Shown here: piece after piece, positions 14,182 to 63,072 of the stretch | Position numbering within the stretch: the stretch's first letter is position 1 | Layout of the letters: each line of letters starts with the position of its first letter | IMG/VR virus record: IMGVR_UViG_3300024252_000004 | Location: 1-64,000 of that record | Length of the DNA: 64,000 bases | Direction: 5' to 3' (one strand) | The notes under the pieces: generated by a model | Database searches by the model: none | Seen by the model: the letters and a program-made list of their open reading frames with translations, nothing else | What the model was told of the DNA's origin: nothing | Program-made: the position numbers and the translations under genes

Positions 14182-14192
14182 TAGGAGATCGA

Positions 14193-14699
14193 ATGAGTGA
14201 GAAGACACGAGAGCAATCTGCTGTTGATGTTATCTATGAGATGAAAAGTCTCGTTGAGAAGCTGGACAAGAAGTTAGACATTCTTGACGGAAACATCAAA
14301 CTGTTGAACAATAAAGTTGTAAAGCTTCAAAAGACCGTGAACAACCTGACTTTGGCTCCTGCTCCCGCAGCAAAACCTAAGGCAGCATTGAAATCTCAGA
14401 AACCTGAGGAACCGAATATAATAAGGACTGGTAAGCGTTCTGATAAATATGTGACCGGACCTATTAGAACCTTTGGCAAGATTATGTCAAAGGGTAGGAA
14501 GCCCATTCCGGACGTACAAGTGGCGGTGTTCAACGAGCAGAACGAGGTTATCAAGACGAGGAAGACAGACTCCAAGGGGTATTGGGAGGTCAGATTGCCG
14601 GAAGGCAGATATGGTGTGCAGTATACACACAAGAAATTTAAGCCGATTAATATCACAATCGAGCTTGACAAAAGCATTACTGAATATGAGGTGAAATAA
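14193..14699 (+). CDS. Coiled-coil plus carboxypeptidase-regulatory-like (transthyretin-like Ig) domain protein
   Basis: ATG 14193 follows SD AGGAGA, preferred over TTG 14178. C-terminal GKIMSKGRKPIPDVQV...TDSKGYWEVRLPEGRYGV pattern. Confidence 0.6.
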   Translation: MSEKTREQSAVDVIYEMKSLVEKLDKKLDILDGNIKLLNNKVVKLQKTVNNLTLAPAPAAKPKAALKSQKPEEPNIIRTGKRSDKYVTGPIRTFGKIMSKGRKPIPDVQVAVFNEQNEVIKTRKTDSKGYWEVRLPEGRYGVQYTHKKFKPINITIELDKSITEYEVK

Positions 14700-45400: not shown

Positions 45401-48400
45401 CGTCTACATTGATTCCTCCACCTCCATTGCTGATGTGGATTCTGACGGAGATTTTGTTCTTGATGAGAACGGATCTCGATTCACCATCACAGATGTTGAT
45501 AGCTTTACATCTATCATTACAGTTGCGTCTCCAGCAGTAAATAATGTTACTGCAATACTCCCTGCGGTTGGACCAGTAACGGTTGTGGTTAAGCCTACCG
45601 TTACAATTACTGATACTGGAATGACTATCATAATCCCATCAGATTCAGGGATAGCAAACGGCGAAAAATTTGAGGTTACATATCTGCCAGATGGTACTCC
45701 TGAGATTCTCAGCACCGTTGCTGTGGACTATCGTTACGGATTCCATTACTTTGATTACACATATCTCAATGACGAGATCGTTGTGTGGTATGAGTATGGT
45801 GACAACGCAATTGACTGGAGCATCTCTGATGCGCTGACGGAAGGCGAAGGTTACTTCATAACTTATAAGTTCGGTGCATTGAGACAGGCGTTGAGAGCTA
45901 ATTTCGGTAGCGTAACAGATATACCATTTTTCAAAAACTTCCCTGTTGAAGTAAATAGGGAACTATACAGAGATGCATTAAAAGGAACTCTACAGGCATT
46001 CCCCAAGGGACCTACCATTCCTGCGTTCACTGAGCTTGTTAAAGCATTCACAGACATTGAGCCTGACATCGATGAGCTTGCCTTCGGAAATTGGATTCTC
46101 GGAAGAGATTACGTAGACCCAGCAGACATTCATTATGATGGTGTCCTTGACTTCACTGATGGCAAATTTGATAGCGGGCTTGTATACAATGATGACGTGG
46201 TTACATCTGTACCTGCGATCTCAAGTTTGCCTCTCAATGAGGGAACATTGGAATGCTGGATTAGACCAGAGTGGTCAGGTGTTGCTAATGATGCGACGCT
46301 CACATTTGATCTTGATAATCTCGGAAGAGCCAAATTCGGTATTAATGCCAAGCAGAGCCCTTATGATGATGGGTTTGTAATCTACCCTACTGATGGAGCA
46401 GTTGGCGGGACAGATGTGACGGGACTTGGTACGACCATTTTTAATTTCAGGACTGATGATTCTCAAGCTTCAGGCTTTGACCAAAGCAGGTTCGGTATAT
46501 TTAAGGAACTTACTACGCTTACGCAGTTAACCCCATCTGATCTCAGAGCTACAATGAAGATTGATAGGTTTGGTTTAGTGATGGATACCCTCGTGACAGA
46601 CACAGTTCCCGATCCGGCAATCTTTAGATTAGCCTCCCTCCTTACTCTTGATGACAAGAGAGAGGTTGGCGTAGAGCTTGCTCTAAGTCCTGTTGATGGA
46701 TTCGAATATCTCGTATCAACTGTGACAATGGAAGATGAAGAGATTCCTAATTTTGATCCTCCTTACCAGACAAGGAAGTGCAAATGCTTCTTGCTCAATA
46801 CACAATCTGACCTTGCACGAATTAATGACCTTGAGATTGAAATTGATCTTGGTTCGGAATTCGAATTGGACAACGCACTTGACGACTACAAGGTTATCAC
46901 TGATGACAACTCTGTGCTTCTCGTAGGAGATAGCGCTGGATACTTCTATGAAGTTATTAAGCTTATAGACCACAATGACGATGAGGTCAAGACGATCAAA
47001 GGAGACTTTGAGAAACTTATCGTTAAGAGAATCGCGGTAAACAATCCGTCAGCTACAACCAACTGGACCGATGAGATCAATGGAACTCTACCCACAGGAA
47101 CTCTTTATCTCTATGTGAAGACTGTTCTTCCGACTATCAACGACGGAGACGATAGCTCTCTTGCTTTCTTAAGCGATGCGGGATTTGTTTACGACTGGTC
47201 AGACTACACAGAGTACAGAGTTAACAGAAGGCCCAGCGAGAACCTTGTCGATGTTCATATTGGAACTGCAAAAGTAACTTACTTCTACACAGATTTCCTC
47301 AAGGTGCAAACAGATACCAATGATCTTAATGGTGTACTCTTTGCCGCATTGGACCAGTCAGTATTATCTGAGTTCAGCGTGTTGAGACACAGAGGACATT
47401 ACGACAATATCTTTAACCTCTCTGATGTATATATTGGAGCAGCAGGTTACAGCCCAACCGTGCATCCTTTCGGTGTTAACAAGGAAGACTCACCCGACAG
47501 CCCTCTTGGTATTCCAAAGAATATTGAGACTGATGAAGGTATCTTTATCTGGTTTGACGAACTATGCACCAACCCATTCTCTGACGAGGCTGGACAGTGG
47601 GTCATGAGAGTTAGGGCTGACCGCTCTGTGCTCTGCCCAGATGATGTAATCGTAAATGGATACCAAGATTATCAAAACGTCTTCATCTCAGAAACTGTCA
47701 CAAAGAAAGTTGAGGGTGATATTTATACCAGCGGGGACTTTGGTTCCGTTGTTAGATCACATCGCGACGAAACACTCGGCGGTTGTGATGTTGGAGAGGT
47801 ATGCTCTGCAACCTTTAGGTACTGCGGCAATGAATTGCTCGAATCAAATGGTTGGTATAAGTTAGAAGAGACAAGCTCCGATCTTATCAATGTTGTGCTC
47901 TCAGGAACTCCAACTGACAGAGTTGAATGGGTTAAACATGGCGACTTTGATACTTCAGAGTCCAAAGGAATCTATAGAGCAGGACCATCCGCACATCTAT
48001 TTGACTGTGTAGAGGAAGAGTCTGTTCTTGGTAACATGCTATATACAAAGCTGCCATGTTCAGGTGGGGATGTAGAGTACACTGTATCAATGAAGGTTGA
48101 TACATATGCGGCCGTATCAGGAACTGAAGTCGGTTCATTCTCTGGCTTTGTCAGTGGCAACTTAACTGGTATCACTCCTATCCATATGAGCGATGGGGAC
48201 ATAAGCGTTAAGGTATCTCTTGGATTCAACTCTATTGGAGAAAACCTTGTGCTTGTTATCGATGGTGAGACTGACGACGTAGTTGATGTGATCTCCTATG
48301 TATGGGACGACTCATTGTTCCACGAGTACACCATTATCAAAACCGAGGCATCAGGTGTTCTAAATGTCTATGTCGATGACATCCTATTGTCTCAGATTTC

Positions 48401-51400
48401 TCTTTCAGATTTCTCTGAGCCGAGCGAGTTTGACACAGGCTCTATTTACTCACAGGAATTCCTGGCGCTGCATATTGCGGACGCTGATCTCGTAGATTCT
48501 GCTGACCTCCACGCAATTGGTTCCAACACGGTAGACGTAGATCTAATCTTCTTCTCTGGTAGCTACACCGAGGGACTTCCAAATCTTGAGTCCACAGATA
48601 TCTTCATCCATACCGATGATAGAATTCAATTCTCATTCTCGATTGACGAACTCGATGTAGATGGCTACGGGTATGGGGATGCATACGATGGCTACGGCGA
48701 CTTAGTATCTATTGATGAGGTATTCATCTCTTCAGACAGAAGAAGATACATCGCAGACTCAGGAATTAAGGATGGCGACAGAAGGTTCTCCATCTTCAAA
48801 GATGGTAAGGGATTCTTAAACTTCAGGGTTTACGATGAATCATTATTCAAAGGAAGAGACTCAACGTTCTTCAACGTTTCAACTAACATCAAGCACTTCG
48901 TTGCTGGTGACCTACATCATGTTGCTGCAAGTTGGAAGCTGAACAGCGTTGACGAGAAGGACGAGATGCACCTCTTTGTTGACGGACAAGAAGCATCCAA
49001 CATTTACAAATTCGGTGGAAAAATTCCTGTCGCAGTGAACGATAAGTTCTCTGACGTAAGCAAAGAATCTCTTCAGAACTTCTTAGTAAGAGACATTGAC
49101 TTCTGCCAGATCTTTACTGATGGTACGACGGTGGCATTGTCCAGCATCTTTACTTCAGTGTCAGCTACATTTACAGAAGATATGGTTGGCCGTAGCATCA
49201 TTGTTACAGGCTCCAGTCTTTACGATACATTAATTGGGCAGCAGCTTATCATTGCATCTTACATTGATGAAAATCGAGTAACTTTAGCAACAGGTTCTAA
49301 CCTTGAAACGGTTACCTTCGTAGCCTCTGCAAGTGATATCGAATTCAAATTCGCTCCAGTTGCCGGCATACGCTCAGACATCATGACAGATCTAAGGAAC
49401 AATAGGTTCGTCATCAAGCGTTCTGATGCGTCTGGAGATATCGAAGAGCTTGGTGGTATTCTATACACTGTTGATGGCACCACCATCGATATCATACAGG
49501 GCAGCAATGTCTACGAGCCTAAGTTCAGAGCTAATATTGATACAAGAATAATTGAGTTTGTTGGTAGGGATGAAGAGTGTAGCTATCTACAGACAGTCTT
49601 CCCGACTGATCTGGATGTGCATGTTGAGACTCTCGGGTTAAACCTTGAGAACTGCAAGTTTATAATTGAGGTACCTCACTCCACGTACAGTACGTCTGGA
49701 GATTATACAAGTGGCCTCAGCGTTCTCAGAACAAGAAGTTCTGAGCCTGTCTCTCTTGATGATGTACGCATCACAAAAGTTATCTTGCCAAGGACCGCCT
49801 TGGAGATCCTTGATGCTACAGAGATCGGAGACAATAAGTTCCTAACCACATTTGACGTAAGCCTCGACGAAGATACCCACAAGGTATCTTCTGAGTCCGG
49901 AAGAGTTATCCGTAGCCAAAACCTTGGTCGTCTGCTTGAACTTAGATTCGAGTCAGACAACGTGAACTTCTGCGACTATACACTTGATGACGGTTACCAG
50001 GATGGATACCAAGATGGTACGACCGGCACAATCACAATCTATGGCCAGACAATAGACGGCATAGATGAAGAGACATTCTTCATCGGACGCAATGGTTCCT
50101 ATTTCGGCAGAAAATACTTCATTGAAGTAACAAGCGTGGAAGGTACGCTTGAGGTTGTTGACGAAGATTACTTCGAGCTTGGAGTCATTGAGATTCGAGA
50201 GGCTAACCCAATTACTACCTCGGATAACAATGGTGATGCAGCGGACATTCTTTCTTATAGGAATGGGGCGTTCACCTTTGCTACAAGTGGTTCAAATGGA
50301 GGGTTCCCATTCGAACTCCATAAGGGATACTACTCAGTTGATTACCCAACTTTCCTAAGGATTGGTCTGCCACAAGTTGGAGACAGACTCTACATCGGTT
50401 CTGACTATGAAGAAGCTCAGCAATTTGGCGGAGCTATTGACGAGCTTAGAATCATCTCCGAGATGTCATCAGATACCAGGGTAACGGAGCGAGACACTAA
50501 TGGAACAAGAAGCGTTACAGAAGATTTCAACAAAAGCATTCCGTTCTGTCCAGACTCTCAGACTACAGCACTGCTTCATTTTAACGATCCAATCGATAAA
50601 CAGCTTAGAAAGCTAAGAAGCATCTCTTTCCTTAACGAGGAGGATAACTATTCTTTCAATCTTTCCAGAGCACAGATCGAGGAGCTACTTGAGTACGTCA
50701 ATGACGGAGAGAAATTCGTCCTTAAGATGATCAACATGGGCTTTGACGAAGACAATGCTGTGAAGACTTTCTATGAAGTTCACAGAGCAGAAGGTGGGCC
50801 GCTTTGGGACGACTCTAAATACTACAGAACATATGCAGAATACATCTCAAGCTCAAGCAGCGTGAACAACGACTTCGGTTACTCAGGATACTTCGTAGAC
50901 GGTAACTCTTTACTCAAGCTAAATGAAGCTGGTGAGTTCCGTCACAAAGAAGGAACTATTGAGTTCTGGGCAAGTCCTGTCATCGACACTACCGTTGATG
51001 CGGAGCGTAGGTATTTCGTAGATGTATCCTCAGCAAGTAGAGATAGAATTAAGTCAACCTCTTCAAGAGTAATTGATTTACCTAACAAGGCTAAGAATAT
51101 CGTCAGTGTTAAGCTGATTAGCTCAGCAAAGAGACTGGAGACATTCTACACCGAGAGCGAGAAGAGCAGAATCCTTTTTGATGAGATTGCTCGAAGCGAA
51201 ATCTCCGGCAGACTTGAGGGTGGCACCGGTTCTGATAAAGACTTTTCGGTAGGTGCAAAGCTATCTGCCAACGGATCAAAGGTACTCTTGGCGGAGTCCC
51301 TCCCGGGGCAGAAAGTTGATGTCATTGTGACATACATCCCGCTTGACTCTTCAGGAGATAGAGTATCTGTTTACAAGGATGAAAATGGATACATGACCTT

Positions 51401-52073
51401 CGCAATTACCGCGAACAATGTTGATCACATTGTGAATAAGAAAATCGATTGGAAAAAGAATACATGGCACAGAGTAATGTGTACATATAAGACTGGCTCT
51501 AATGGGTACGACACAATGAAAATCTTTGTTGACGGTGAAGAGGGAGGAATCATCAGATACGGTGAGGGTTTGATTTACGGCACAGGATTCATCTATGGGC
51601 AGTACGCTCAGAGAGATGGACAATCTAAGAGTGTTGAGTACAAAATTGATCTCAACAGCGATCTTAAGCTAATTGCAATTGGCTCTGACATCTTCGGAGA
51701 TAATAACATTAGAGGAAGATTGGATAACTTAAGATTCAGCAGAGTCATCAGACCTACATCGAGAGATTCGGCAGGCAACTATGTTGACCTGGGTTATTCA
51801 AGTAATATAAACACAGTAAGGCCCGTCGTAAAAGACGACGCAACAACCTATCTGCAAGACTTTGATGCAGATGGTGAAAGGATTGATAAGTTCGCAACGA
51901 TTATCGATCCTGAAAATGGTATATTTGAATTTGACATTAATGTATTCGACAATTTCGATAGAGTAATCGGAGTTAACGATGGCGAAGTTGAGGAGCTACT
52001 TGTTGATCTTGTTAATAGGCTTAAGCCTGCTCACGCAAATGCCGTAGTAAGGTTCATTAAATCAAGATGCTAA
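42417..52073 (+). CDS. Giant baseplate wedge protein (gp7 / P2 gpI-like core) with LamG/concanavalin-like domains
   Basis: 3218 aa; ELYRDALKG...KGPTIPAF wedge motif; terminal RLKPAH motif; two sets of LamG signatures (EGTLECW / HHVAASW..LFVDG / GAIDELRI and EGTIEFW / WHRVMCTY..IFVDG / GRLDNLRFS). Confidence 0.7.
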   Translation: MALRPVAFSIPSTTELKVTFSENLSESLSSIHFEVESLSGSVRDLEVTGVTIAGSVALIKTRPQVAGNYYLLKFLDATDLNFISNKGSRLLDDSISRELFFVGIDNVNPIRDRIYRRIPDLFELEGSILKNILSAQANELFKAQKDIGSVLSNNYVSETVVDEFRTRSAGAFDRMANENVYEVVRISKKLTGESIKTDTIEFSSDVSAPRMEIMPVYPVPLQQVIIEDEEITVDSEGNSFEGYLLSLAKKNVTKILSVLLIRSDDNEDCDGDIGINYDVERYKYAITSNRYDQDYGFNLHTLESNQILLSEFGNLPRPTIYDTIIVTYAYKDLGRHILIDQIEVSRVEDAISEAVPSSATSFFLDNAPVVNSSNNVATSGALTFSVSENDGTTPDEFVTEITFNASRLPSFPGEWSCDYETGEVFVYGKTINTEGTGRNNYIVDYLYRKEFKEDLDYSISDQDLVATPDRELANKEAEIFIRYDYVFAEGTDYEMSSHIEVMPEFMENRLNTSFSVIPQHTPVTDVFRILNQTTGELYTPMYHSDSEIFFAGNRSPEIKSAEGEKANFQRVRNEELGVIGEFIAPTHTAKITSVASNNSIQFSPGIPSELISQNSNEYYFRELENDDGDYVAEDVQIKFFGDEDSGGLITSVGINVSASPPTRGSTVIIGPRAFVIHLDNEGILNKNSDALGSLVNTSFVATDKDVFENERYFEPILVNPGFSSTTSGGISQALTADKGTDFYSNLERLRVVGDYLVDYRYGIAYVAVGLEQDVNVSTAHYAYATHKTAGKNILTASSVAKKTNGPEDLTLATKVYSNYGHNVFEITIHDIEDGLTLYDGVTEAVDLNDNLAIICEVREDYTVVVPHNILAINSIFKRSDLEGVNLNASDEADRSPGYSAEDLTTATKNGGRNLCDSSFCTFTDNVIDLKKVVEKRAYMNADGDFEFTILDSDANTFVKCVRSSTQLEFFSDELNITKVDDLEVVSVALDGSEVTVYIDSSTSIADVDSDGDFVLDENGSRFTITDVDSFTSIITVASPAVNNVTAILPAVGPVTVVVKPTVTITDTGMTIIIPSDSGIANGEKFEVTYLPDGTPEILSTVAVDYRYGFHYFDYTYLNDEIVVWYEYGDNAIDWSISDALTEGEGYFITYKFGALRQALRANFGSVTDIPFFKNFPVEVNRELYRDALKGTLQAFPKGPTIPAFTELVKAFTDIEPDIDELAFGNWILGRDYVDPADIHYDGVLDFTDGKFDSGLVYNDDVVTSVPAISSLPLNEGTLECWIRPEWSGVANDATLTFDLDNLGRAKFGINAKQSPYDDGFVIYPTDGAVGGTDVTGLGTTIFNFRTDDSQASGFDQSRFGIFKELTTLTQLTPSDLRATMKIDRFGLVMDTLVTDTVPDPAIFRLASLLTLDDKREVGVELALSPVDGFEYLVSTVTMEDEEIPNFDPPYQTRKCKCFLLNTQSDLARINDLEIEIDLGSEFELDNALDDYKVITDDNSVLLVGDSAGYFYEVIKLIDHNDDEVKTIKGDFEKLIVKRIAVNNPSATTNWTDEINGTLPTGTLYLYVKTVLPTINDGDDSSLAFLSDAGFVYDWSDYTEYRVNRRPSENLVDVHIGTAKVTYFYTDFLKVQTDTNDLNGVLFAALDQSVLSEFSVLRHRGHYDNIFNLSDVYIGAAGYSPTVHPFGVNKEDSPDSPLGIPKNIETDEGIFIWFDELCTNPFSDEAGQWVMRVRADRSVLCPDDVIVNGYQDYQNVFISETVTKKVEGDIYTSGDFGSVVRSHRDETLGGCDVGEVCSATFRYCGNELLESNGWYKLEETSSDLINVVLSGTPTDRVEWVKHGDFDTSESKGIYRAGPSAHLFDCVEEESVLGNMLYTKLPCSGGDVEYTVSMKVDTYAAVSGTEVGSFSGFVSGNLTGITPIHMSDGDISVKVSLGFNSIGENLVLVIDGETDDVVDVISYVWDDSLFHEYTIIKTEASGVLNVYVDDILLSQISLSDFSEPSEFDTGSIYSQEFLALHIADADLVDSADLHAIGSNTVDVDLIFFSGSYTEGLPNLESTDIFIHTDDRIQFSFSIDELDVDGYGYGDAYDGYGDLVSIDEVFISSDRRRYIADSGIKDGDRRFSIFKDGKGFLNFRVYDESLFKGRDSTFFNVSTNIKHFVAGDLHHVAASWKLNSVDEKDEMHLFVDGQEASNIYKFGGKIPVAVNDKFSDVSKESLQNFLVRDIDFCQIFTDGTTVALSSIFTSVSATFTEDMVGRSIIVTGSSLYDTLIGQQLIIASYIDENRVTLATGSNLETVTFVASASDIEFKFAPVAGIRSDIMTDLRNNRFVIKRSDASGDIEELGGILYTVDGTTIDIIQGSNVYEPKFRANIDTRIIEFVGRDEECSYLQTVFPTDLDVHVETLGLNLENCKFIIEVPHSTYSTSGDYTSGLSVLRTRSSEPVSLDDVRITKVILPRTALEILDATEIGDNKFLTTFDVSLDEDTHKVSSESGRVIRSQNLGRLLELRFESDNVNFCDYTLDDGYQDGYQDGTTGTITIYGQTIDGIDEETFFIGRNGSYFGRKYFIEVTSVEGTLEVVDEDYFELGVIEIREANPITTSDNNGDAADILSYRNGAFTFATSGSNGGFPFELHKGYYSVDYPTFLRIGLPQVGDRLYIGSDYEEAQQFGGAIDELRIISEMSSDTRVTERDTNGTRSVTEDFNKSIPFCPDSQTTALLHFNDPIDKQLRKLRSISFLNEEDNYSFNLSRAQIEELLEYVNDGEKFVLKMINMGFDEDNAVKTFYEVHRAEGGPLWDDSKYYRTYAEYISSSSSVNNDFGYSGYFVDGNSLLKLNEAGEFRHKEGTIEFWASPVIDTTVDAERRYFVDVSSASRDRIKSTSSRVIDLPNKAKNIVSVKLISSAKRLETFYTESEKSRILFDEIARSEISGRLEGGTGSDKDFSVGAKLSANGSKVLLAESLPGQKVDVIVTYIPLDSSGDRVSVYKDENGYMTFAITANNVDHIVNKKIDWKKNTWHRVMCTYKTGSNGYDTMKIFVDGEEGGIIRYGEGLIYGTGFIYGQYAQRDGQSKSVEYKIDLNSDLKLIAIGSDIFGDNNIRGRLDNLRFSRVIRPTSRDSAGNYVDLGYSSNINTVRPVVKDDATTYLQDFDADGERIDKFATIIDPENGIFEFDINVFDNFDRVIGVNDGEVEELLVDLVNRLKPAHANAVVRFIKSRC

Positions 52074-52121: not shown

Positions 52122-55100
52122 ATGGCTAAAGAAAACCGTTTGCCTACAGAAAGAATAAATTGGTTTGATGGTCAACGTGTGACTGAGACAGACTTAGACG
52201 TTGAGCAGATTTACGTTCAGAAGATTACTTCCGAGCTTGCACTTGATGCGATCGGAAGTGGTGTGGTACAGCCAGACCCCTTCGAAACAAGAGTCCTGCT
52301 TGATACAAGTAAGCCTGGAAAGTATACCGATGGCGATGACGAAAATTCCTCAAAACTTGATATTGAGGGCGGTACCTATGATGGTATGCCAATCTATTTT
52401 GACAGACAGGTATCAGACACTACGAGAGGAGTTCGACTTGAGGTCGAGCTTACTGACGTGGATGCAAAAGGGTTAGAGAAAACCAGAGTTCTTCTCTTGG
52501 GAAGGATCTTCGACGGTATTGATTCCGAAGGTGTCCTTACCGCAGAAGTACTTGACTTTGCCAGCAATGGCAAAAAGATCTCCAGCTATTACTTCAGAGA
52601 AATCATTGCAGTCTACTTCAATAACTTCTCTGGCGGTACTGGTGCAACACATTACGAATCAAGCAAAGAAAGCTTAGACCTAATCTCATTGAATAGCGGT
52701 AAGGCCGTAGTGAGAGAGGCTCCACCGCTTTGGGTTTATCCAACTCCGAGCATGTCAGAGCAAGCACAGTCACCTAACTTTGGCTTGGCTACATTCATTA
52801 CGTCTGCAACCTCCAACACTATTGAGGATGAGATCGAGGATGGCTTAGGTGCTTCTAATTCCGTTGGAGACCTATACCTTGATCTTGAAGGAAGAGAAGA
52901 GATTAAGCTTGAGGCTGATGCAAGCACGGCAATAGCTTATGGTCAGAAGTTCCTTGCAAAATGCAATAACCTTCAAAGGATCGATCTACTTCTATCTGCT
53001 GAAGAAGATGAGAGTGCAGCCTTAGGGGAAGAATACGATTGGTCTGGCGAACTTGTAATCTCAATTCATGAGCTTGCATCAGATGTTAACTGCCCAACCG
53101 ATGCCGTCCCTGATGACTTGATCGACTTCGATCCTGATATCACTCCGATTATTGAGGTGGCATTCAGCCAGGAGGATCTAGAGGAACTCGGATACTCACT
53201 TGGCGCTACACCTTCAATGGTTAGCTTTAACTTTGCTGGCACATTAATCGCAGATCCTAACATCGAACCGACAATCGAGGAGGATAAATACTATGCCTTC
53301 CTCTTGTCAAGAAGGGGCGATAATAGAACTGGAACCGTTATTCTTCAGAAGGGCTTCTCAACGAAGGCCGGAAAGGTAGAAGAGAATGTTCCCCTTACTG
53401 TATTTGAAGAATACGGAAAAGCTACTTCAAAGTTTTTCGAATTCGATCCCGTAACAAAGAGATATATAAGCGACTCTGATTCATCTATGTGGTACGTCGT
53501 ACACTGTGACTCCATTGGCGTTACAGATGGTACAGCATACTCTGATGAAGGTGTTGCCGTTACGCTACAAAAGACCGAAGAGTTTATTGGTGGCGCAGAG
53601 ATCTCCTTTATCCTTAAAAATATTCCTCTTGCTACTGTAGAAGAAGGCGAGTCAAACTATGTTGTCCTCTCCCATGTAGAAGAATTCACAACTCCTGACG
53701 TACATCCGCGAACCAATAACTTTGTGTTCAAGAGGATCAAAGATACGCTAGCCGTAACCGTAGTTGACAGCGCCGGACTTGAAGAGTTGCAAGAGGATAC
53801 TTATCCGCTATTACTGGCAAGAGTAAAAGACAAGAATGTCCGAGATGCTCAAACCATTACTGGCACATTTGACAAGCCCGGGTTCATCGATGTAACTAAG
53901 GTTATCATTGAAGACCCAAGCACCACGCTCCTGTCGGCCAATCTTATCGGAAGAGTTATCGTTCCCGACACAGACTGTAATTGCACAGCCAGATACCGAG
54001 TAGTTAAAGCTGAGTGTTTACAGGTACTTGCTGGCGATCTTGACCGAGATGGTGAGATCACTCAGAATGACGTTCTTGAGATGCTGGATGTGGTTGGCAA
54101 TACAATTAACTCAGAAGATACAGAACGTTCGATCCTCGGTGGAGAGATTGACATCATTGATTTCTTGGCTGCGGATCTTAATGCTGACGAGAGTGTCGAT
54201 GGTGATGACATCGAGCTTCTTGAGGATGCTGTCGATGGTTATGTTAACTTTACCACAGAAGAAAAACTCACCTACCTTGTGCTCCACTTAGAGAATATCC
54301 TTGAAACCCAGGACTATCCTGAGATTTATGAAGATGATGCTTCAACCGGAGAGACAACTGCTGATACAGATTCTATAGAGTTCACAGCATCGGACAGAGC
54401 TGCTCTCATCATTCGCCCAGGAGACTTGATCGAAATTGAGTCCGGTAGCGATTCGGGCACTTATGTCATCTTAACGAAAACAATCTCCTCCGACAATACC
54501 ACCGTTACTTTGACGGTAGAGAATCAGGACGGAACAGGTGTATCTTTTGCAGGAGACACAGGCTTTGATGTAACGCTAACCAGTGGAACCAAGGTCAATG
54601 TCTTCGCAGACAACACAGCCCTTGCCCAAATTCCTTTTGCGGAAAGCAGCTACGAAATCTCCTTTGTGGAATCTCCATTCTCTGCTGAGTTTTTAGACAT
54701 CTGTGATTTAAGAAGACTAGTTGGCCTGAGTTTCATTGAGGAAAAGAGTTCTTCCTGTGAGTGTGAAGAGTCAGCATGTGTTGATGAAGATGCATGTGAT
54801 CCGATTTATAAGAATCAACAGTACCTCTCTGGCGATCTTTATTTGCCAGATGGTAACATCCTTTCTGCTCCTGATACAGCTCACAGACTTGATAGTGAGT
54901 ACTCGAACATTAAGATCACCTTGCCTCCTGGCACGATCGATGACTGTGCTATAGATCTTTACAATACTTTCATTAAAGCTGAGGACGACGGTTGCAAAAC
55001 TTCCGCAGGCTATCCAGCTATGAAGTATTCAGATGGAACCTACGTTGGCTGTAGCGATGATGGCACAGATACTGACATAACTAAAGGAAGAATTAAGTTC

Positions 55101-56672
55101 TCTAAGGCAATTTGCAGCTTGTATGTAGATAGTCTTATCGACGGTTACGGTCTTGATGGATATGCTGACGAGACTGATATAGGACTCGGCGTAGAGTCAG
55201 TTGCTGAATCCTTTGTAGACAAGAGCTACACAGGCTTCTCGGACTGGACAGACGACCCAGGCAACAATACATCTATCACTAACATTGATAATCCAACTGG
55301 CGCTAACGAACCTGCTGTATTTGACATTACCACTTCTGGAGACAGCGGTGCAAGGTACGGAAGAATCGTATCTCCTGTTGACGCTCAAGATTTCGAAGGT
55401 GATTTCATTGTAGATTTCTTCGCGACCAGAACTACATGGATTGATAGCGATCTTTCTGGTGGAGAAGTATCAGCGTTTACTACGCTGACGATTACCAACA
55501 CCGATAGCTCAGTAGCTACTCTGAAACTTGGTTGGAAGCTGGTCGGTGGCAATGCAACTAAGCTGTTCTACTCTGGTGTAATTGAAGATGCCACGATGAC
55601 TGTGCTAAGCACATTCGAATATCAAATTGATGCACCTGAGTCCGTTGGCGATGAAGTTAAGTTTAGACTAAGAAGAGAAAATGATGTTGTAAAGGCTTAC
55701 TATATCGTCCCAGGGCAGCTTGACGGGACAGATCTTTCCAGCTTCGGTGGTTATGTTAGACTCGGAACGAACCCGGATATGCAGCCCGGCAAAGGAACTG
55801 TCTTAGCTGAGTATGAAATTACTCAGGACAATTCTCCATCCGCAGGTAAGTCATTCTTCGTAAGATTATCTGAGTTCAAAGTGCTATCAGCTTACTCTTC
55901 AGATGATGAAAAGACTTCCGTCAATATCGGAAGAGATGAAGCATCTGATGAAATCGAAAGAGGCACCTTCACATTCCCTGTTTCAGTTACGAGCAAGACA
56001 AACATTGTTGAAGCTTTCTTGAAATTTGAATCTGAAGTCTCTGGTGATTTTGATGATGATTTTAATGTTATTGGAATCAATGTTCTTAATACAGATAATC
56101 TGGGAGAGATCTTTAACCTCCCGCTATTGGATGATGCAGATAAGATTGTTACATTCTCCCCTGGGACACTTGCTGTGGGTGATGAGCTTGCTGTCGATGT
56201 CACGAACATCATTGTTTCTTTCATCTCAACTGCGGGTCATTTGCCTGGGCAGCTTAAGGGCTTTATGATTGAGCCTGATGCTTCAGCAGACTCTACGATT
56301 ACTGTATCAAATGTGGCTACTCTGGAGATTGGTTACGAAGATGTAACTACAGGGGTTATTTTCAAAGTGGGTACCTCGCTTGATATGAGCACAGGTATTG
56401 TTACATTGAATACAAGGAATATCTTGTACGATGCCCTTGTACCAGAAAACAGAACGGTTCTTAACTTCGGAGTATTCCTTAAGAAAGCTGGATTCATGAA
56501 TAGCGACATTGATGTTGGTATTGATGATCTCAATAGAATTGGAATTGGAACGTGTACCGATGAGACGGTGCTTGATGAAGATGATGAGTGCTTCTTCATT
56601 ACAGGTGATACAGGAACTGGCACATTTGTCCAGGGCCCGTTTCCTTGCAATTTTCACTTTCCTGCCTCTTGA
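52122..56672 (+). CDS. Baseplate-attached fibre / receptor-binding protein with dockerin-like domain
   Basis: N-terminal RINWFDGQRVTETDLDVEQIY anchor motif; duplicated Ca-binding loops GDLDRDGEITQND and ADLNADESVDGDD; Cys clusters. Confidence 0.6.
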   Translation: MAKENRLPTERINWFDGQRVTETDLDVEQIYVQKITSELALDAIGSGVVQPDPFETRVLLDTSKPGKYTDGDDENSSKLDIEGGTYDGMPIYFDRQVSDTTRGVRLEVELTDVDAKGLEKTRVLLLGRIFDGIDSEGVLTAEVLDFASNGKKISSYYFREIIAVYFNNFSGGTGATHYESSKESLDLISLNSGKAVVREAPPLWVYPTPSMSEQAQSPNFGLATFITSATSNTIEDEIEDGLGASNSVGDLYLDLEGREEIKLEADASTAIAYGQKFLAKCNNLQRIDLLLSAEEDESAALGEEYDWSGELVISIHELASDVNCPTDAVPDDLIDFDPDITPIIEVAFSQEDLEELGYSLGATPSMVSFNFAGTLIADPNIEPTIEEDKYYAFLLSRRGDNRTGTVILQKGFSTKAGKVEENVPLTVFEEYGKATSKFFEFDPVTKRYISDSDSSMWYVVHCDSIGVTDGTAYSDEGVAVTLQKTEEFIGGAEISFILKNIPLATVEEGESNYVVLSHVEEFTTPDVHPRTNNFVFKRIKDTLAVTVVDSAGLEELQEDTYPLLLARVKDKNVRDAQTITGTFDKPGFIDVTKVIIEDPSTTLLSANLIGRVIVPDTDCNCTARYRVVKAECLQVLAGDLDRDGEITQNDVLEMLDVVGNTINSEDTERSILGGEIDIIDFLAADLNADESVDGDDIELLEDAVDGYVNFTTEEKLTYLVLHLENILETQDYPEIYEDDASTGETTADTDSIEFTASDRAALIIRPGDLIEIESGSDSGTYVILTKTISSDNTTVTLTVENQDGTGVSFAGDTGFDVTLTSGTKVNVFADNTALAQIPFAESSYEISFVESPFSAEFLDICDLRRLVGLSFIEEKSSSCECEESACVDEDACDPIYKNQQYLSGDLYLPDGNILSAPDTAHRLDSEYSNIKITLPPGTIDDCAIDLYNTFIKAEDDGCKTSAGYPAMKYSDGTYVGCSDDGTDTDITKGRIKFSKAICSLYVDSLIDGYGLDGYADETDIGLGVESVAESFVDKSYTGFSDWTDDPGNNTSITNIDNPTGANEPAVFDITTSGDSGARYGRIVSPVDAQDFEGDFIVDFFATRTTWIDSDLSGGEVSAFTTLTITNTDSSVATLKLGWKLVGGNATKLFYSGVIEDATMTVLSTFEYQIDAPESVGDEVKFRLRRENDVVKAYYIVPGQLDGTDLSSFGGYVRLGTNPDMQPGKGTVLAEYEITQDNSPSAGKSFFVRLSEFKVLSAYSSDDEKTSVNIGRDEASDEIERGTFTFPVSVTSKTNIVEAFLKFESEVSGDFDDDFNVIGINVLNTDNLGEIFNLPLLDDADKIVTFSPGTLAVGDELAVDVTNIIVSFISTAGHLPGQLKGFMIEPDASADSTITVSNVATLEIGYEDVTTGVIFKVGTSLDMSTGIVTLNTRNILYDALVPENRTVLNFGVFLKKAGFMNSDIDVGIDDLNRIGIGTCTDETVLDEDDECFFITGDTGTGTFVQGPFPCNFHFPAS

Positions 56673-56770: not shown

Positions 56771-56995
56771 ATGCACTGGACTGATGTAAATATGGTTGTC
56801 CTGAGGGACGATGGGACTTGGCAGGCGATCACTACGGATGCGAGCGCCTGTGGGGTCAGCACAAAAAGGGTTATCATTTTTGTGGATACCTTTGATAATA
56901 GGGTGATGGCTCAAAGGCTGACCTGCACCGATCCCTCCAGACAAATTCATATCCTTCGGGATGATAATACATTAGAGGAGCTAAAACTGTGCTGA
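56771..56995 (+). CDS. Small hypothetical protein
   Basis: SD AGGAG at 56760-56764 fits ATG 56771; overlaps the next start. Confidence 0.5.
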   Translation: MHWTDVNMVVLRDDGTWQAITTDASACGVSTKRVIIFVDTFDNRVMAQRLTCTDPSRQIHILRDDNTLEELKLC

Positions 56996-58095
56996 AAATT
57001 CGTTCACATTCTATCTTCGGCACGCACCATAGTTGGGCAGTCACGATGAGATCTTTATTCGGAGAATTCATTAAGGATGGCCACGATCCGTACATCCAGA
57101 GCATCAATAAGTATTCGTGCGTGCCTAAGGAATGGGAGCAATATTGCAGAAGAAACGTTTTGGATCCCGATCTTGACATCTCCTATACTGCTCCTATCAA
57201 TTTTCATAGCCGCTTCACAACCGACGCTAAAGTAAAAGCTGCCATCTATAATTATGAAACGATCCCTCTTCCTGAGGTTTTCGGCAAAGCTTACGAGCAT
57301 GTAGATTACGTGCTACCTTCGTCGGAATTCTCGAAAAGGGTTTTTGTTGAAGCTGGCTGGCCGGAGGAGAAGCTCGTTGTGGTTCCTCATGGTATCCACA
57401 TGGAAGACTTCAATAACAAGGATAAGCTTAAGCTTAGAAACAAAAACACATTCAGATTCCTGAACGTATCCATTGCACATTATAGGAAGAATATTCCTTT
57501 ATTGGTTCAGGCATATTACGATGCTTTTACGTCTAAAGACGATGTATGTTTGGTTATCAAGACACAGATTACTCCGACCATCGGAAAGAAAAGGAATCGT
57601 TTCGAGCAGCTTGTGGCACGAGACATTGCCCTGCTTCAAGATAAAATGATTCAAAATGGTAGAGCAGCAGACTCCCTACCTCTTATCGAACTCATTGAGG
57701 AGAAGTTTCCATCTATGGTTCCGCTATACAATTCCTGCGACGTGTTGGTCTCAGCTACCTCGGCAGAGGGTTTTGGCATTCCATTGCTGGAAGGGCTCGC
57801 AGCTAACATGCTTGTCATTGCGCCAAGATGCACAGGGCAGCTTGATTTCCTGAATGATAATAATTCTCTGCTTGTTGACGTAGCAACGATGAAGGCTTCT
57901 CCTCAGTACCAGTATTGGACAGTGACAGATAAGGCATGGACTTATATTCCGATTAAGAAATCCTTATCCATGCAGATGAGAAATGCTTTTGAGAATGATA
58001 AAAAGCTTCGGAAGAAGTTCAAAAAAGGACGTGCCGAAACGCTTGAGCAATTCACATGGGAGAACGCAGCAAAGCAAATTTTGGAGCTGGTATGA
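56989..58095 (+). CDS. GT-B fold glycosyltransferase, GT4-like
   Basis: AEGFGIPLLEGLA (ExFGxxxxE); RKNIPLLVQAYYDAF...VCLVIKT; GTG start with SD GAGGAG. Confidence 0.9.
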   Translation: MLKIRSHSIFGTHHSWAVTMRSLFGEFIKDGHDPYIQSINKYSCVPKEWEQYCRRNVLDPDLDISYTAPINFHSRFTTDAKVKAAIYNYETIPLPEVFGKAYEHVDYVLPSSEFSKRVFVEAGWPEEKLVVVPHGIHMEDFNNKDKLKLRNKNTFRFLNVSIAHYRKNIPLLVQAYYDAFTSKDDVCLVIKTQITPTIGKKRNRFEQLVARDIALLQDKMIQNGRAADSLPLIELIEEKFPSMVPLYNSCDVLVSATSAEGFGIPLLEGLAANMLVIAPRCTGQLDFLNDNNSLLVDVATMKASPQYQYWTVTDKAWTYIPIKKSLSMQMRNAFENDKKLRKKFKKGRAETLEQFTWENAAKQILELV

Positions 58096-59648
58096 AAGTA
58101 TTTGATTCGCTCAAGAATAAAAAGTGGAATGGGAAAGGAATAGTCTTAAACAAAGACATTATGGTGATGAAGGCGAAATCCAGAATCAGCCACAACATAG
58201 ATTTGAAAGCAGGAGAACACACCCTTCATATCCTTGGCAAGAAGCGCTCAGGAAATGGAAGGGTATCTCTGCATGTGATGACCGAGAACGGAACCCTTCT
58301 GTTGTCCGAGGATATTGAATTCCAGAGAAGTTCTACAGCAGAGGTGCGATTCAAATTCGATGTCCCATTAGATTATGGTCTCGGAGCCATCCATTTGAAA
58401 AGGGCAGGTAATTCTTTCGGAACGATTGAGCTAAGCAGAATTAGACTTGTCCGAGAAGAAACAGAAGAGAAAGCTAAAAGAGCCGAGGATATCTTGGAGG
58501 ATAAGAAGAGGAATCGGAATCCCGTTCCTGCAATCTCATTTGACGGGGGCCTCGATATCAAAAAGAAAATCGCGTTTGTCATTCCTTATGGGATCTATGG
58601 CGGAGCCGAGGTTTATATTCAGAGCATTATTCAGAACATTGATTTGTCAGGATACCAAATGGACTTCTTATTTCTTGGGAAAAATAAGTTGATGAATGTG
58701 CTTCAGGATCCAAGATTAAAAATGAAGTTATGTAGAAACCTTGACGCATTAAAAGGCTCTCTGATCTCAACGGATTATGATTACATTGTGTATTACAATA
58801 GGGCAGATGTTTATAGGCTGCTTGAGTCACTGAAGGCAGGCACCCAAATATCCTCCAGGCTCATAGAGATTTACCATAGCGACTTTGAATGGCCGGGAGC
58901 TTTATCTAAGGTGAAGAAGAGGAAGTATGTAGACACCATGTTCCGTGTTGCTCCGTCTTTAGCTAAAGATATTTCAGGTGTATCTACAGAGAAGAAGGTA
59001 ACGATCCCGGTCGGTATCAATCTTGATAAGTTTTCGCACGCACACCGAGACAAGAAATTAAGGAAGAAACTTTTACGAGAGAAGAAAGCTGTGATTGGCA
59101 CTGTGGCAAGAATGTCTCCAGAGAAGAATATTGAATACATTCTTAAGCTTGCAACAAAGATGCCTGATTACTCTTTCGTCCTTGTTGGGGATGGACCATT
59201 GCTCAAATCCTCAAGAAAATATGTGGAAGATAAAGGAATGGACAACGTTGCTTTCATGGGATTTCAGCAGGATGTGCATAAACTGTATCCCAATTTTGAC
59301 GCATTCTTATTGCCTTCAAAGATGGAAGGAACTCCGATATCTATACTTGAAGCAATGTCTTCGGGTACAATAGTATTTGCATCCAATGTCGGAGCCATCT
59401 CTGATATCCTTGAGCATGACAAGACGGGATTTTTTATTAGTGGAACTCCGGCAAAAGACAGGAAGTTGATTCAAGAAAACTTGGAGAGGCTTGATGTGAT
59501 TGGAAATGCAAGAAGGTATGTTGAGGAGAACCATGACATCAGAACAAACGCTCGTGAGTTTATGATTGCAATGATTGACTCCGAACAACATTTTTCTGAA
59601 ATGGAGAATGGAGACTACGTGGTAAAGCTAAAGGGTAGGTTTATATGA
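58092..59648 (+). CDS. GT4-like glycosyltransferase with extra N-terminal beta-sandwich domain
   Basis: ATG 58092 in ATGA overlap; GGAEVY, IGTVARMSPEKN, VGDGP, MEGTPISILEAM. Confidence 0.9.
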   Translation: MKVFDSLKNKKWNGKGIVLNKDIMVMKAKSRISHNIDLKAGEHTLHILGKKRSGNGRVSLHVMTENGTLLLSEDIEFQRSSTAEVRFKFDVPLDYGLGAIHLKRAGNSFGTIELSRIRLVREETEEKAKRAEDILEDKKRNRNPVPAISFDGGLDIKKKIAFVIPYGIYGGAEVYIQSIIQNIDLSGYQMDFLFLGKNKLMNVLQDPRLKMKLCRNLDALKGSLISTDYDYIVYYNRADVYRLLESLKAGTQISSRLIEIYHSDFEWPGALSKVKKRKYVDTMFRVAPSLAKDISGVSTEKKVTIPVGINLDKFSHAHRDKKLRKKLLREKKAVIGTVARMSPEKNIEYILKLATKMPDYSFVLVGDGPLLKSSRKYVEDKGMDNVAFMGFQQDVHKLYPNFDAFLLPSKMEGTPISILEAMSSGTIVFASNVGAISDILEHDKTGFFISGTPAKDRKLIQENLERLDVIGNARRYVEENHDIRTNAREFMIAMIDSEQHFSEMENGDYVVKLKGRFI

Positions 59649-60766
59649 GCAACGTATCGGTCAGGTTTTTCGGACCTTTAAATAACTACTCTGGGTATGG
59701 TAATGCTGTAAAGAATTTTGCACTGGCCTTCTCAGAGTCCGAGTGCGATACGCATTTTGCTTTTGCCAACAAGTTAAAGATAGATTATGCTGAGACATAT
59801 GATCGTCTATACCATTACGATGGGAAATGCATGGTTGACTTTTATCTGCATGGTCCGCCATGGAACAAGCATAGGTCAAGAGCCAAATATAAAATCGGGT
59901 ATTTCTATTGGGAAGCAGATAAGCTGCCACCTGTATGGCTGAAGGGGCTCAACTCTGTGAATGAGATTTGGGCGCCTTGTAATCTTGTCAGGAATGCTTG
60001 CAAGCAGGCAGGATTTAGAGGAAGGATCAGAGTGGTTCCTACGCCCGCAGAGACGTGGTACTCTAATAAGAAAGCTGTAATCCCGTCTGGATTTTCTGAT
60101 GACTACATGTTGTCAGATGAGGTTTTCAAATTTTACTCTATTTTTCAATGGAACGAGAGGAAGGGATATAAGGAGCTTCTAAATTCTTATTACAGAACCT
60201 TTACGCGAAACGATAAGGTAGTCTTAATTGTAAAAACGAATCCACTTAACATCAATGGAAACACCAGAGAGAAGATCAAGTATGAAATTCTTGATATTAA
60301 AAGAAGGCTAAACCAGAAGTATTATCCTCCTGTCTATCTGATGGATGACATCATTCCTGAGGAGCATATTCAGGCGCTGCACATGACCGCAGATTGTTAC
60401 ATTTCTCCGCATCATGGAGAAGGGTGGGGTATGCCGATTCATGACGCAATGCTTTCTGGCAAGCAGATTATTACAACCAAATTTGGCGGAGTAACTGAGC
60501 ATCTCGATAATGATTCAGCTCATATCATTAACCACACTATTGGGCCGGTAAGGAATATGGCATGGTCATCATTATATACGAACAAGCAGAACTGGGCGTA
60601 TCCGAAGGTCAACCATTTGAAGAAGTTGATGAGAGATGTTTATGAGAACCATGAACTGTATGAAGAGAAAGGGTATAAAGCTCGTGAGATTGGGGAGACA
60701 ATGACGGTAGAGACTGTTGCTGATTTTATAACAAGGGAACTTACAAGGGAGAAGCTAAGACTATGA
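59645..60766 (+). CDS. GT4-like glycosyltransferase
   Basis: SGYGNA, FQWNERKG, GEGWGMPIHDAM; same subtype as 56989-58095. Confidence 0.9.
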   Translation: MSNVSVRFFGPLNNYSGYGNAVKNFALAFSESECDTHFAFANKLKIDYAETYDRLYHYDGKCMVDFYLHGPPWNKHRSRAKYKIGYFYWEADKLPPVWLKGLNSVNEIWAPCNLVRNACKQAGFRGRIRVVPTPAETWYSNKKAVIPSGFSDDYMLSDEVFKFYSIFQWNERKGYKELLNSYYRTFTRNDKVVLIVKTNPLNINGNTREKIKYEILDIKRRLNQKYYPPVYLMDDIIPEEHIQALHMTADCYISPHHGEGWGMPIHDAMLSGKQIITTKFGGVTEHLDNDSAHIINHTIGPVRNMAWSSLYTNKQNWAYPKVNHLKKLMRDVYENHELYEEKGYKAREIGETMTVETVADFITRELTREKLRL

Positions 60767-63071: not shown

Positions 63072-63072
63072 G

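What the first reader, a model, noticed from the sequence alone, without database searches (positions are those of the whole stretch)
54030..54235. Dockerin-like duplicated calcium-binding module inside a tail fibre
GDLDRDGEITQNDVLEMLDVV...AADLNADESVDGDDIELLEDAV matches the two F-hand loop-helix repeats of dockerins (GDxNxDGxIxxxD...aDxNxDGxVdxxD). Dockerins bind cohesin domains, found on cellulosomes and many non-cellulosomal bacterial and archaeal surface proteins. The virus may use cohesin-dockerin recognition as a receptor interaction, or as a plug-in socket for accessory virion or host proteins.
Basis: partly seen in the sequence, partly recalled or inferred. Interest (0 to 1): 0.6.

Follow-up and report, generated by a model that had tools for sequence, protein, structure and literature searches.

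The report
Dockerin-type calcium module in megaphage tail protein
A 1,516-residue tail or baseplate protein of a 395-kb marine phage carries a real, conserved dockerin-type double calcium-binding module inserted in a beta-hairpin, but no cohesin partner was found, so it is a new setting for a known fold and not a shown cohesin-dockerin system.

Summary
Window 54030-54235 encodes residues 637-705 of a 1,516-aa ORF (52122-56672, +), with two 12-residue calcium loops, each followed by a helix.

It is not a chance motif. It is conserved without indels in 62 aligned orthologues from ~400-kb seawater phage contigs, and the calcium-ligand positions are invariant or limited to conservative swaps.

It is dockerin-like, not a generic EF-hand:
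- 44 of 62 orthologues hit Pfam Dockerin_1, against 6 or fewer for any EF-hand family.
- Distant ~950-1,000-aa orthologues pass Pfam's cut-off over the whole profile.
- The AlphaFold model (pLDDT 86) matches solved dockerins first, with Foldseek and with an independent all-PDB search (Z 7-9, rmsd 2-2.6 Å).

This copy itself scores below the Pfam cut-off (19.4 against 22.9 bits). The module also departs from classical dockerins. It is internal, inserted in a beta-hairpin, and it has about 12 extra linker residues with an invariant GNTINS motif.

No Pfam cohesin is encoded by this phage or two relatives, and the host is unknown. The most likely role is a calcium-stabilised docking or structural knob of the tail-fibre/baseplate assembly. 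Cohesin-mediated receptor binding is untested.

"Tail fibre" rests on gene order only.

The parts
52122..56672 (+). ORF of 1,516 aa (P0001): conserved megaphage tail/baseplate-block protein that carries the module
   Evidence: There are 69 protein clusters, nearly all ~1,500-1,540 aa (four of 1,181-1,479 aa), on contigs up to 420 kb. Conservation is even along the whole length.
53991..54029 (+). Beta-strand (aa 624-636) entering the module; first arm of the hairpin that holds the insertion
   Evidence: AlphaFold models: strand 11-23 and strand 106-117.
54030..54251 (+). Dockerin-type module, aa 637-710
   Evidence: Pfam Dockerin_1 profile positions 1-54 of 57 match aa 637-701. 44 of 62 orthologues hit Dockerin_1.
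54036..54071 (+). Calcium loop 1 (aa 639-650), 12 residues with D at positions 1, 3, 5 and 12, T at 9 and G at 6
   Evidence: Column counts: D639 and D650 are 100% conserved, D643 is 98%, position 641 is D or N, and position 647 is T, D, S or N.
54096..54125 (+). Expanded linker with the near-invariant motif G-N-T-I-N-S-x-x-T-E (aa 659-668); about 12 residues more than the Pfam dockerin profile
   Evidence: G659, T661, N663 and T667 are invariant. 65 residues align to 54 profile positions. An extra helix is predicted at aa 665-673.
54174..54209 (+). Calcium loop 2 (aa 685-696), with D, N, D, D, D at positions 1, 3, 5, 9 and 12
   Evidence: D685, D693 and D696 are invariant; positions 687 and 689 hold only D or N. 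The loop is intact in 27 of 29 distant relatives.
54201..54251 (+). Last helix and cap (aa 694-710), the most conserved face of the module
   Evidence: E701, A703, G706 and F710 are invariant; D702, D705, Y707 and N709 are at least 92% conserved. Helix 81-91.
54264..54299 (+). Beta-strand (aa 715-726) leaving the module; second arm of the hairpin
   Evidence: Strand 102-113 and strand 196-206.
54312..54593 (+). Small beta-barrel domain after the module (aa 731-824)
   Evidence: Model. It shows generic beta-barrel matches, including phage tail and tailspike domains, at Z 5-8.
39095..42406 (+). Baseplate J-like wedge gene, two genes upstream
   Evidence: Pfam Baseplate_J at 3.3e-21 and phrog_6 at 5e-36.
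42417..52073 (+). 3,218-aa giant ORF with a Laminin_G_3 domain, the conserved upstream neighbour
   Evidence: The same gene order is seen in relatives.
56989..63071 (+). Glycosyltransferase cluster directly downstream, interrupted by an HNH endonuclease gene
   Evidence: Its position is conserved in relatives.

Best explanation
The region is a dockerin-type module: two F-hand calcium loops, each with a helix, packed as in cellulosomal dockerins. It is inserted as an excursion between the two strands of a beta-hairpin, in the middle of a conserved 1,516-aa protein encoded at the end of the contractile-tail/baseplate gene block of a 395-kb marine phage. Shown or computed: the homology to dockerins, the fold, the intact calcium ligands and the conservation. 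Inferred: both sites bind calcium. They would be filled in seawater (about 10 mM calcium, from general knowledge) but not inside the cell, so the module would become rigid once the virion is released. Its strongly conserved face (the last helix plus the GNTINS linker) would then serve as a protein-protein docking or latching surface within the tail-fibre/baseplate assembly. The partner is not a Pfam-recognisable cohesin. My split of confidence: about 0.9 that it is a real dockerin-fold calcium module, about 0.4-0.5 that its role is a virion-internal docking or structural knob.
For: - Pfam Dockerin_1 is the only family hit, and it covers profile positions 1-54 of 57.
- 44 of 62 orthologous modules hit Dockerin_1 (best 4.3e-9), against 6 or fewer for any EF-hand family.
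- The family profile searched against PDB returns mainly dockerins (2y3n_B at 3.3e-4).
- A scan of 1.84 billion proteins with the family profile finds the orthologues and then multi-dockerin proteins that score 168-257 bits on Dockerin_1.
- Distant 950-1,000-aa orthologues, with the module at the same position and the same gene neighbours, pass Pfam's cut-off at 35-38 bits over profile positions 1-57.
- The AlphaFold model has pLDDT 85.9. Foldseek's top ~30 matches are all dockerins. VIA-align gives Z 8.8 to 8x39_A, 8.2 to 5lxv_B and 7.7 to 2ccl_B, at rmsd 2.0-2.6 Å over 60-67 residues.
- An independent search of 48,161 PDB chains with the 381-aa model again ranks a dockerin first (4dh2_D, Z 7.9), with no EF-hand protein in the top 50.
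- Calcium-ligand columns are invariant or limited to conservative swaps. Position 12 is Asp in both loops, as in dockerins.
- The second half of the module is among the most conserved stretches of the protein, and loop 2 is intact in 27 of 29 distant relatives.
- The whole protein keeps its length and sequence along its full extent, which fits a structural part better than a variable receptor tip.
- The habitat is seawater.
Against: - This copy is below Pfam's gathering score.
- Calcium binding, the fold and any partner are predictions, not measurements.
- The conserved face may simply pack against the rest of the same protein. I could not read model coordinates to check exposure.
- A conserved face would also fit a conserved host ligand.
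- No virion proteomics and no homology to a characterised tail protein places this protein in the particle.
- Absence of a Pfam cohesin does not exclude a divergent cohesin-like beta-sandwich among the many unannotated giant proteins nearby.
Confidence: 0.55

Rival explanations
1. True cohesin-dockerin plug-in inside the virion: the module binds a phage-encoded cohesin or cohesin-like beta-sandwich on another structural or accessory protein, and so attaches it to the baseplate or fibre.
For: The dockerin homology and fold are solid. The conserved last-helix face corresponds to positions used for cohesin contact in classical dockerins (plus general knowledge of type I dockerins). The gene has fixed neighbours in all relatives: a Baseplate_J-like gene and a 2,200-3,300-aa giant. 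Many neighbouring giant proteins have no annotation.
Against: The Pfam Cohesin model finds nothing in six frames at E <= 10 in this complete genome, or at E <= 1 in two related records. The conserved acidic face of the core family is replaced by other residues in distant orthologues. I had no candidate partner to test.
Confidence: 0.2
2. Receptor recognition: the dockerin binds a cohesin-bearing surface protein of the host.
For: Non-cellulosomal cohesins and dockerins occur on surface proteins of many bacteria and archaea (PMC9012536, which cites Peer et al. 2009). The protein sits where tail fibres are usually encoded.
Against: The module is mid-protein, not at the distal end. It is among the most conserved parts of a protein family that spans 40-85% identity across many samples, whereas receptor-binding tips usually vary. 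The host is unknown. The one hit in bacterial genomes is a 4.3-kb contig in a Zixiibacteriota MAG, probably misbinned.
Confidence: 0.1
3. Partner-less calcium staple: the module only stabilises the local fold of the fibre or baseplate protein in calcium-rich seawater and binds nothing.
For: The calcium ligands are the most conserved feature. Loop 1 degenerates in 4 of 29 distant relatives without loss of the module. Many non-cellulosomal dockerins have no known cohesin (PMC9012536).
Against: The invariant non-ligand residues (E701, A703, G706, F710 and the GNTINS linker) go beyond what metal binding needs. They could still be core or packing residues.
Confidence: 0.15
4. Generic EF-hand pair acting as a calcium sensor, unrelated to dockerins.
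For: A single-sequence search of PDB gives neuronal calcium sensor 1 as the top hit, though weakly (E 0.09). There are weak EF-hand Pfam hits.
Against: EF-hand families hit 6 or fewer of 62 orthologues, against 44 for Dockerin_1. There is no helix before loop 1; a strand runs straight into it. Position 12 is Asp, not Glu, in both loops. EF-hand proteins have Foldseek probability of 0.03 or less and are absent from the top 50 of the all-PDB search.
Confidence: 0.03

Closest known systems
Type I dockerins of cellulosomal enzymes (e.g. PDB 1ohz_B, 2ccl_B, 4dh2_D, 8x39_A; Pfam PF00404)
   Same: Duplicated 12-residue calcium loop plus helix, Asp at loop position 12, no helix before loop 1, and the same packing (Z 6.8-8.8, rmsd 1.9-2.6 Å over 54-66 residues). 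Orthologues pass Pfam's cut-off.
   Different: The module is internal, in a beta-hairpin, not at the end of an enzyme behind a linker. The loop-to-loop spacing is 46 residues, about 12 more than the Pfam profile, with an invariant GNTINS motif and an extra helix. No cohesin is encoded in the genome. The carrier is a phage structural-block protein. This copy is below Pfam's cut-off.
Ruminococcus flavefaciens dockerins with atypical linkers (5lxv_B, 8ajy_B, 5m2o_B)
   Same: Among the best structural matches, and the highest identity among them (5lxv_B: Z 8.2, 38% identity over 63 aligned residues). These dockerins also tolerate insertions between the repeats (general knowledge).
   Different: They are C-terminal modules of secreted cellulosome components with known cohesin partners.
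Non-cellulosomal dockerins (Clostridium perfringens NagH/NagJ, 2ozn_B; archaeal and ANME dockerin proteins)
   Same: A dockerin fold used outside cellulose degradation (Z 6.9, rmsd 1.7 Å; PMC9012536).
   Different: Those systems have cohesins encoded in the same organism. None is seen here.
Phage proteins auto-annotated 'Dockerin type 1' in BFVD/UniProt, and an ESM Atlas viral cluster with PF00404 in 80% of members
   Same: They are viral (Caudoviricetes) carriers of dockerin-type modules, and are the best viral fold matches (probability 0.85-0.98).
   Different: They are different proteins (211-1,344 aa) with no detected full-length similarity to P0001. None is functionally characterised as far as the searched literature shows.
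Canonical EF-hand pairs (calmodulin, neuronal calcium sensor 1)
   Same: The same 12-residue DxDxDG-type loop chemistry, and a paired-loop arrangement.
   Different: There is no entering helix at loop 1, Asp rather than Glu at position 12, and only weak sequence and fold matches.

Membership tests
Dockerin (Pfam PF00404 Dockerin_1) | This copy reaches Pfam's curated gathering score (22.9 bits) | tested here: not met
   12.9 bits in the whole protein and 19.4 bits on the excised piece; 17.9 bits in the six-frame scan.
Dockerin (Pfam PF00404 Dockerin_1) | Orthologous modules (same column-for-column alignment, same gene context) reach the gathering score | tested here: met
   44 of 62 orthologues hit at E <= 0.01, best 4.3e-9. 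13 clusters carry a precomputed PF00404 hit. P0104, P0123 and P0135 score 35.5-38.1 bits over profile positions 1-57 and share the gene order.
Dockerin (Pfam PF00404 Dockerin_1) | Two tandem 12-residue calcium loops with oxygen ligands at positions 1, 3, 5, 9 and 12 (Asp at 12), each followed by a helix | tested here: met
   Loops are aa 639-650 and aa 685-696. Ligand columns are invariant or limited to conservative swaps (D/N; T, D, S or N at loop 1 position 9) in 62 sequences, apart from one G at 641 and one N at 643. Helices follow both loops. Metal binding itself was not measured.
Dockerin (Pfam PF00404 Dockerin_1) | Dockerin three-dimensional fold | tested here: met
   Predicted model only. 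Dockerins fill the top of Foldseek against PDB, of VIA-align (Z up to 8.8) and of an all-PDB VIA search. Nearly the whole length of the dockerin chains is aligned.
Dockerin (Pfam PF00404 Dockerin_1) | Compact ~60-70-residue module with about 34 residues between loop starts | tested here: inconclusive
   The spacing is 46 residues here, and 46-59 in relatives. The insertion forms an extra helix and carries an invariant motif. This is a variant architecture; some Ruminococcus dockerins also have insertions.
Dockerin (Pfam PF00404 Dockerin_1) | A cognate cohesin encoded by the same genome | tested here: not met
   PF00963 finds nothing at E <= 10 in the 395-kb genome, nor at E <= 1 in two related phage records. 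Divergent cohesin-like folds are not excluded.
Dockerin (Pfam PF00404 Dockerin_1) | Calcium-dependent binding to a cohesin | not testable with these tools
   There is no candidate partner and the host is unknown. For that reason complex prediction was not run.
EF-hand pair (Pfam EF-hand_1/5/6/7/8) | Helix-loop-helix with an entering E helix, Glu at loop position 12, and Pfam EF-hand scores above the cut-off | tested here: not met
   A strand, not a helix, precedes loop 1. Position 12 is Asp in both loops. EF-hand hits are 10-12 bits against cut-offs of about 25, and 6 or fewer of 62 orthologues hit.
Phage tail fibre / receptor-binding protein | Homology to a characterised fibre, or a variable distal tip, or presence in the virion | tested here: inconclusive
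   Support comes from gene position only: after Baseplate_J and the giant ORF. There is no significant PHROGs hit (best E 0.041) and no INPHARED hit. No variable tip is seen. The only PDB hits outside the module are weak (E 0.03-0.19).

The most novel reading that the evidence does not exclude
Marine megaphages use a calcium-switched dockerin on a conserved tail protein as a true plug-and-socket connector. The socket would be either a divergent phage-encoded cohesin-like domain that mounts accessory proteins on the baseplate, or a cohesin on the host surface. Either would be the first cohesin-dockerin system working in virion assembly or host recognition.
Probability: 0.2. Interest if true: 0.75.

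Novelty: new variant of a known kind. Interest (0 to 1): 0.42.

Why it matters
Dockerins are known as the connectors of cellulosomes and a few other extracellular complexes. Their frequent occurrence without cohesins is an old puzzle.

Here a dockerin-type module is a fixed, strongly conserved part of a structural-block protein in a whole lineage of ~400-kb seawater phages. Other phage proteins in public structure libraries also carry the fold.

If it proves to be a calcium-gated docking element, it would show a new use of the fold in virus particles. It would also give a handle on how giant phage baseplates are assembled or armed after release into seawater.

If it is only a calcium staple, the finding is a useful annotation for a large family of proteins currently labelled hypothetical.

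Tried and rejected
Searches that gave nothing useful:
- PHROGs on P0001 and four relatives: nothing meaningful.
- tblastn of P0001 and P0104 against 50,697 GenBank phage records: no match.
- Full-length family profile against PDB: only the dockerin stretch and weak hits.
- ESM Atlas feature search: no usable hit. The Atlas shape search gave weak TM scores only, but one viral cluster carries Dockerin_1.
- Cohesin search in this phage and two related phage records: negative.
- Literature searches for dockerin with phage, tail fibre, virion or baseplate: no paper on a dockerin in a phage tail protein. PMC5967307 mentions only a carbohydrate-binding module from a dockerin-bearing protein. Peer et al. 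2009 is not held in the library.

Host inference failed:
- The genome-collection scan found one 4.3-kb contig in a Zixiibacteriota MAG, which I take as misbinning, not host evidence.
- The NCBI copies carry no names.

Tools not used:
- Read laying: no RNA run holds the gene.

Explanations rejected:
- A chance acidic motif, because the module is conserved and matches the dockerin profile.
- A generic EF-hand, as set out under the rival explanations.
Full report
**Where the finding sits.** The window is the first 64 kb of a 395,127-bp virus record that CheckV rates as complete. The genome is 43.8% G+C and carries 44 tRNA genes and a tmRNA. The finding lies in one long ORF, 52122-56672 on the + strand, which encodes 1,516 aa (P0001). 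Nucleotide 54030 is the first base of codon 637, and 54235 falls in codon 705.

**Gene context.** Upstream are a 1,069-aa protein with a weak tail-sheath C-terminal hit and a protein resembling a tail-tube initiator. Next comes a 1,103-aa Baseplate_J / wedge protein (Pfam 3.3e-21, phrog_6 5e-36), then a 3,218-aa ORF with a Laminin_G_3 domain. P0001 follows. Directly downstream is a run of group-1 glycosyltransferase genes. P0001 is thus the last gene of a contractile-tail/baseplate block, which is where fibres are often encoded. It has no detectable similarity to any characterised fibre:
- PHROGs: nothing significant (best E 0.041).
- GenBank phages: no match.
- Full-length family profile against PDB: only the dockerin stretch and weak hits.

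**Is it more than chance?** Alone, the sequence is borderline:
- Dockerin_1 is the only Pfam family hit, covering profile positions 1-54 of 57. It scores 12.9 bits in the whole protein and 19.4 bits on the excised piece, against a cut-off of 22.9.
- A single-sequence search of PDB gives equally weak hits to neuronal calcium sensor 1 and to dockerins.

The family settles it. A word-indexed search found 69 protein clusters, nearly all ~1,500-1,540 aa (four shorter, 1,181-1,479 aa), on contigs up to 420 kb. The gene is held by many seawater metagenomes. In the 62 orthologues I could anchor, the module aligns without a single indel. The calcium-ligand columns are as follows:
- D639, D650, D685, D693 and D696 are invariant.
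- D643 is 98% conserved.
- Positions 641, 687 and 689 hold only D or N, apart from one G at 641.
- Position 647 is T, D, S or N.

**Dockerin or EF-hand?** Four independent lines point to dockerin.
1. Scanned one by one, 44 of 62 orthologous modules hit Dockerin_1 (best 4.3e-9). No EF-hand family is hit by more than 6.
2. A profile of the family searched against PDB returns mainly dockerins at the top.
3. The same profile was searched against 1.84 billion representative proteins. It finds the orthologues and a shell of more distant 950-1,600-aa relatives. Those relatives carry the module at the same position, around residues 580-700, and many have near-canonical GDVNGDG and ADVNGDG loops. Beyond them it finds proteins made of many dockerin repeats, scoring 168-257 bits on Dockerin_1. 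Three of the distant relatives pass Pfam's cut-off at 35-38 bits over the whole profile. Two of these were looked up, and both have the same neighbours: a ~1,080-1,090-aa protein, a 2,200-2,300-aa Laminin_G_3 giant and, on the longer contig, glycosyltransferases downstream.
4. AlphaFold2 on the 120-aa alignment gives pLDDT 85.9. The predicted order is: a strand, loop 1, a helix, a short bridge, two short helices, loop 2, a long helix, and a strand that pairs back with the first.
   - Foldseek's top ~30 PDB matches are all dockerins. Parvalbumin, troponin C and nucleobindin appear only at probability 0.03 or less.
   - VIA-align gives Z 8.8 to 8x39_A, 8.2 to 5lxv_B (38% identity) and 7.7 to 2ccl_B, at rmsd 2.0-2.6 Å. 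The alignments cover almost the full length of the dockerin chains.
   - A second model of aa 520-900 (pLDDT 86.5) was searched against 48,161 PDB chains without Foldseek. It again puts a dockerin first for residues 635-713, with no EF-hand protein in the top 50.

Two sequence and model features also fit the F-hand description of dockerins. No helix precedes loop 1, and position 12 of both loops is Asp rather than Glu. That these features typify dockerins is my own knowledge of the family.

**How it differs from classical dockerins.**
- It is not terminal. It is an excursion between two paired strands (aa 624-636 and 715-726) and is followed by a small beta-barrel (aa 731-824).
- The starts of the two loops are 46 residues apart, about 12 more than the Pfam profile allows. 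In distant relatives the spacing is 46-59.
- The extra stretch carries the near-invariant motif G-N-T-I-N-S-x-x-T-E and forms an additional helix.
- Conservation is asymmetric. Exposed positions of the first helix vary, whereas the last helix and its cap are almost frozen: E701, A703, G706 and F710 are invariant, and D702, D705, Y707 and N709 are at least 92% conserved.
- In distant relatives, loop 1 has lost ligands in 4 of 29 sequences, while loop 2 is intact in 27 of 29. Their last-helix residues differ from those of the core family.

**Cohesin partner.** The Pfam Cohesin model finds nothing in six frames of the complete genome, even at E <= 10. It also finds nothing at E <= 1 in two related phage records of 236 and 332 kb. 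The host is not known. The only hit in 185,579 species-representative genomes is a 4.3-kb contig in a Zixiibacteriota MAG, which looks misbinned. I had no structure-prediction jobs left to screen the many unannotated giant proteins for cohesin-like sandwiches. I also had no specific pair that would justify a complex prediction.

**Most likely mechanism.** Shown or computed: this is a dockerin-fold module with two intact calcium sites, fixed in a lineage of seawater megaphages, in a protein whose length and sequence are conserved end to end with no hypervariable tip. Inferred:
- The sites would be filled in seawater and empty in the cytoplasm, so the module would stiffen after release of the virion.
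- The frozen last-helix and linker face would then act as a docking or latching surface within the fibre/baseplate assembly.
- This face could equally be a packing surface against the rest of the same protein.

I rate the identity of the module at about 0.9 and this functional reading at about 0.4-0.5. The rivals are:
- a real cohesin-like partner encoded by the phage (0.2);
- a partner-less calcium staple (0.15);
- a host cohesin receptor (0.1), disfavoured by the mid-protein position and the strong conservation;
- a generic EF-hand sensor (0.03).

**Novelty.** The fold and the family are known. Phage proteins automatically labelled 'Dockerin type 1' already sit in BFVD, and one ESM Atlas viral cluster has PF00404 in 80% of its members. 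The full-text searches found no study of a dockerin in a phage tail or baseplate protein. The review literature treats non-cellulosomal dockerins as widespread and mostly unexplained (PMC9012536). I file this as a new variant of a known kind: an internal, linker-expanded dockerin in a conserved megaphage structural-block protein, with no cognate cohesin in sight.

**Limits.** All structural statements rest on predicted models, and I could not read their coordinates. Calcium binding, presence in the virion and any interaction are untested. 

Noticed in passing
window 56989-63999; L005 14637-24584; L007 14567-23555: A glycan-synthesis cluster always follows the dockerin-bearing gene. Here it is four or five group-1 glycosyltransferases. 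Relatives add NTP-transferase, epimerases, dTDP-sugar isomerase, a DegT aminotransferase, hexapeptide acyltransferase, sulfotransferase and methyltransferase genes. The position is conserved but the content varies. This would fit glycosylation of virion proteins or remodelling of the host surface.
   Followed up: partly
window 60763-62157: An HNH/homing endonuclease gene (phrog_3339, 1.9e-51) sits between two glycosyltransferase genes. In the relative L005 the corresponding glycosyltransferase genes are adjacent. It therefore looks like a mobile insertion in this genome.
   Followed up: partly
window 42417-52073: A 3,218-aa ORF whose only recognisable domain is Laminin_G_3, near the C-terminus. 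It is the fixed upstream neighbour (2,224-3,317 aa) of the dockerin-bearing gene in all relatives examined.
   Followed up: partly
G000:C1:302460-302537 (outside the window): ARAGORN calls a tRNA with anticodon CUA (an amber-reading tRNA, labelled Pyl) among 44 tRNAs, plus a tmRNA at 325213-325615. The structural genes of the window are open under the standard bacterial code, so no recoding is evident here.
   Followed up: no
window 54246-54254 (aa 709-711): The module ends in N-F-[S/T]. N is 97% conserved, F is 100%, and S or T occupies the third position in 79% of orthologues. This is an N-x-S/T sequon-like motif right next to a glycosyltransferase cluster. It may be coincidence.
   Followed up: no
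window 53976-54017 (aa 619-632) and 54702-54797 (aa 861-892): Nearly invariant cysteines flank the module: C619, C621 and C632 before it, and C861, C879, C886 and C892 after it. They could form disulfides or a metal site at the base of the insertion.
   Followed up: no
window 14178-14699 and 2890-4905: A 173-aa protein carries a CarboxypepD_reg / prealbumin-like domain, and a 671-aa protein carries a CopC-like domain. Both lie among otherwise unannotated large structural-block ORFs.
   Followed up: no
L009 (JAJRUL010000238.1, 4,337 bp): A fragment of an orthologue (53% identity) is binned in a Candidatus Zixiibacteriota MAG. The contig holds only this gene, so it is most likely a phage contig misbinned into the MAG.
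   Followed up: no
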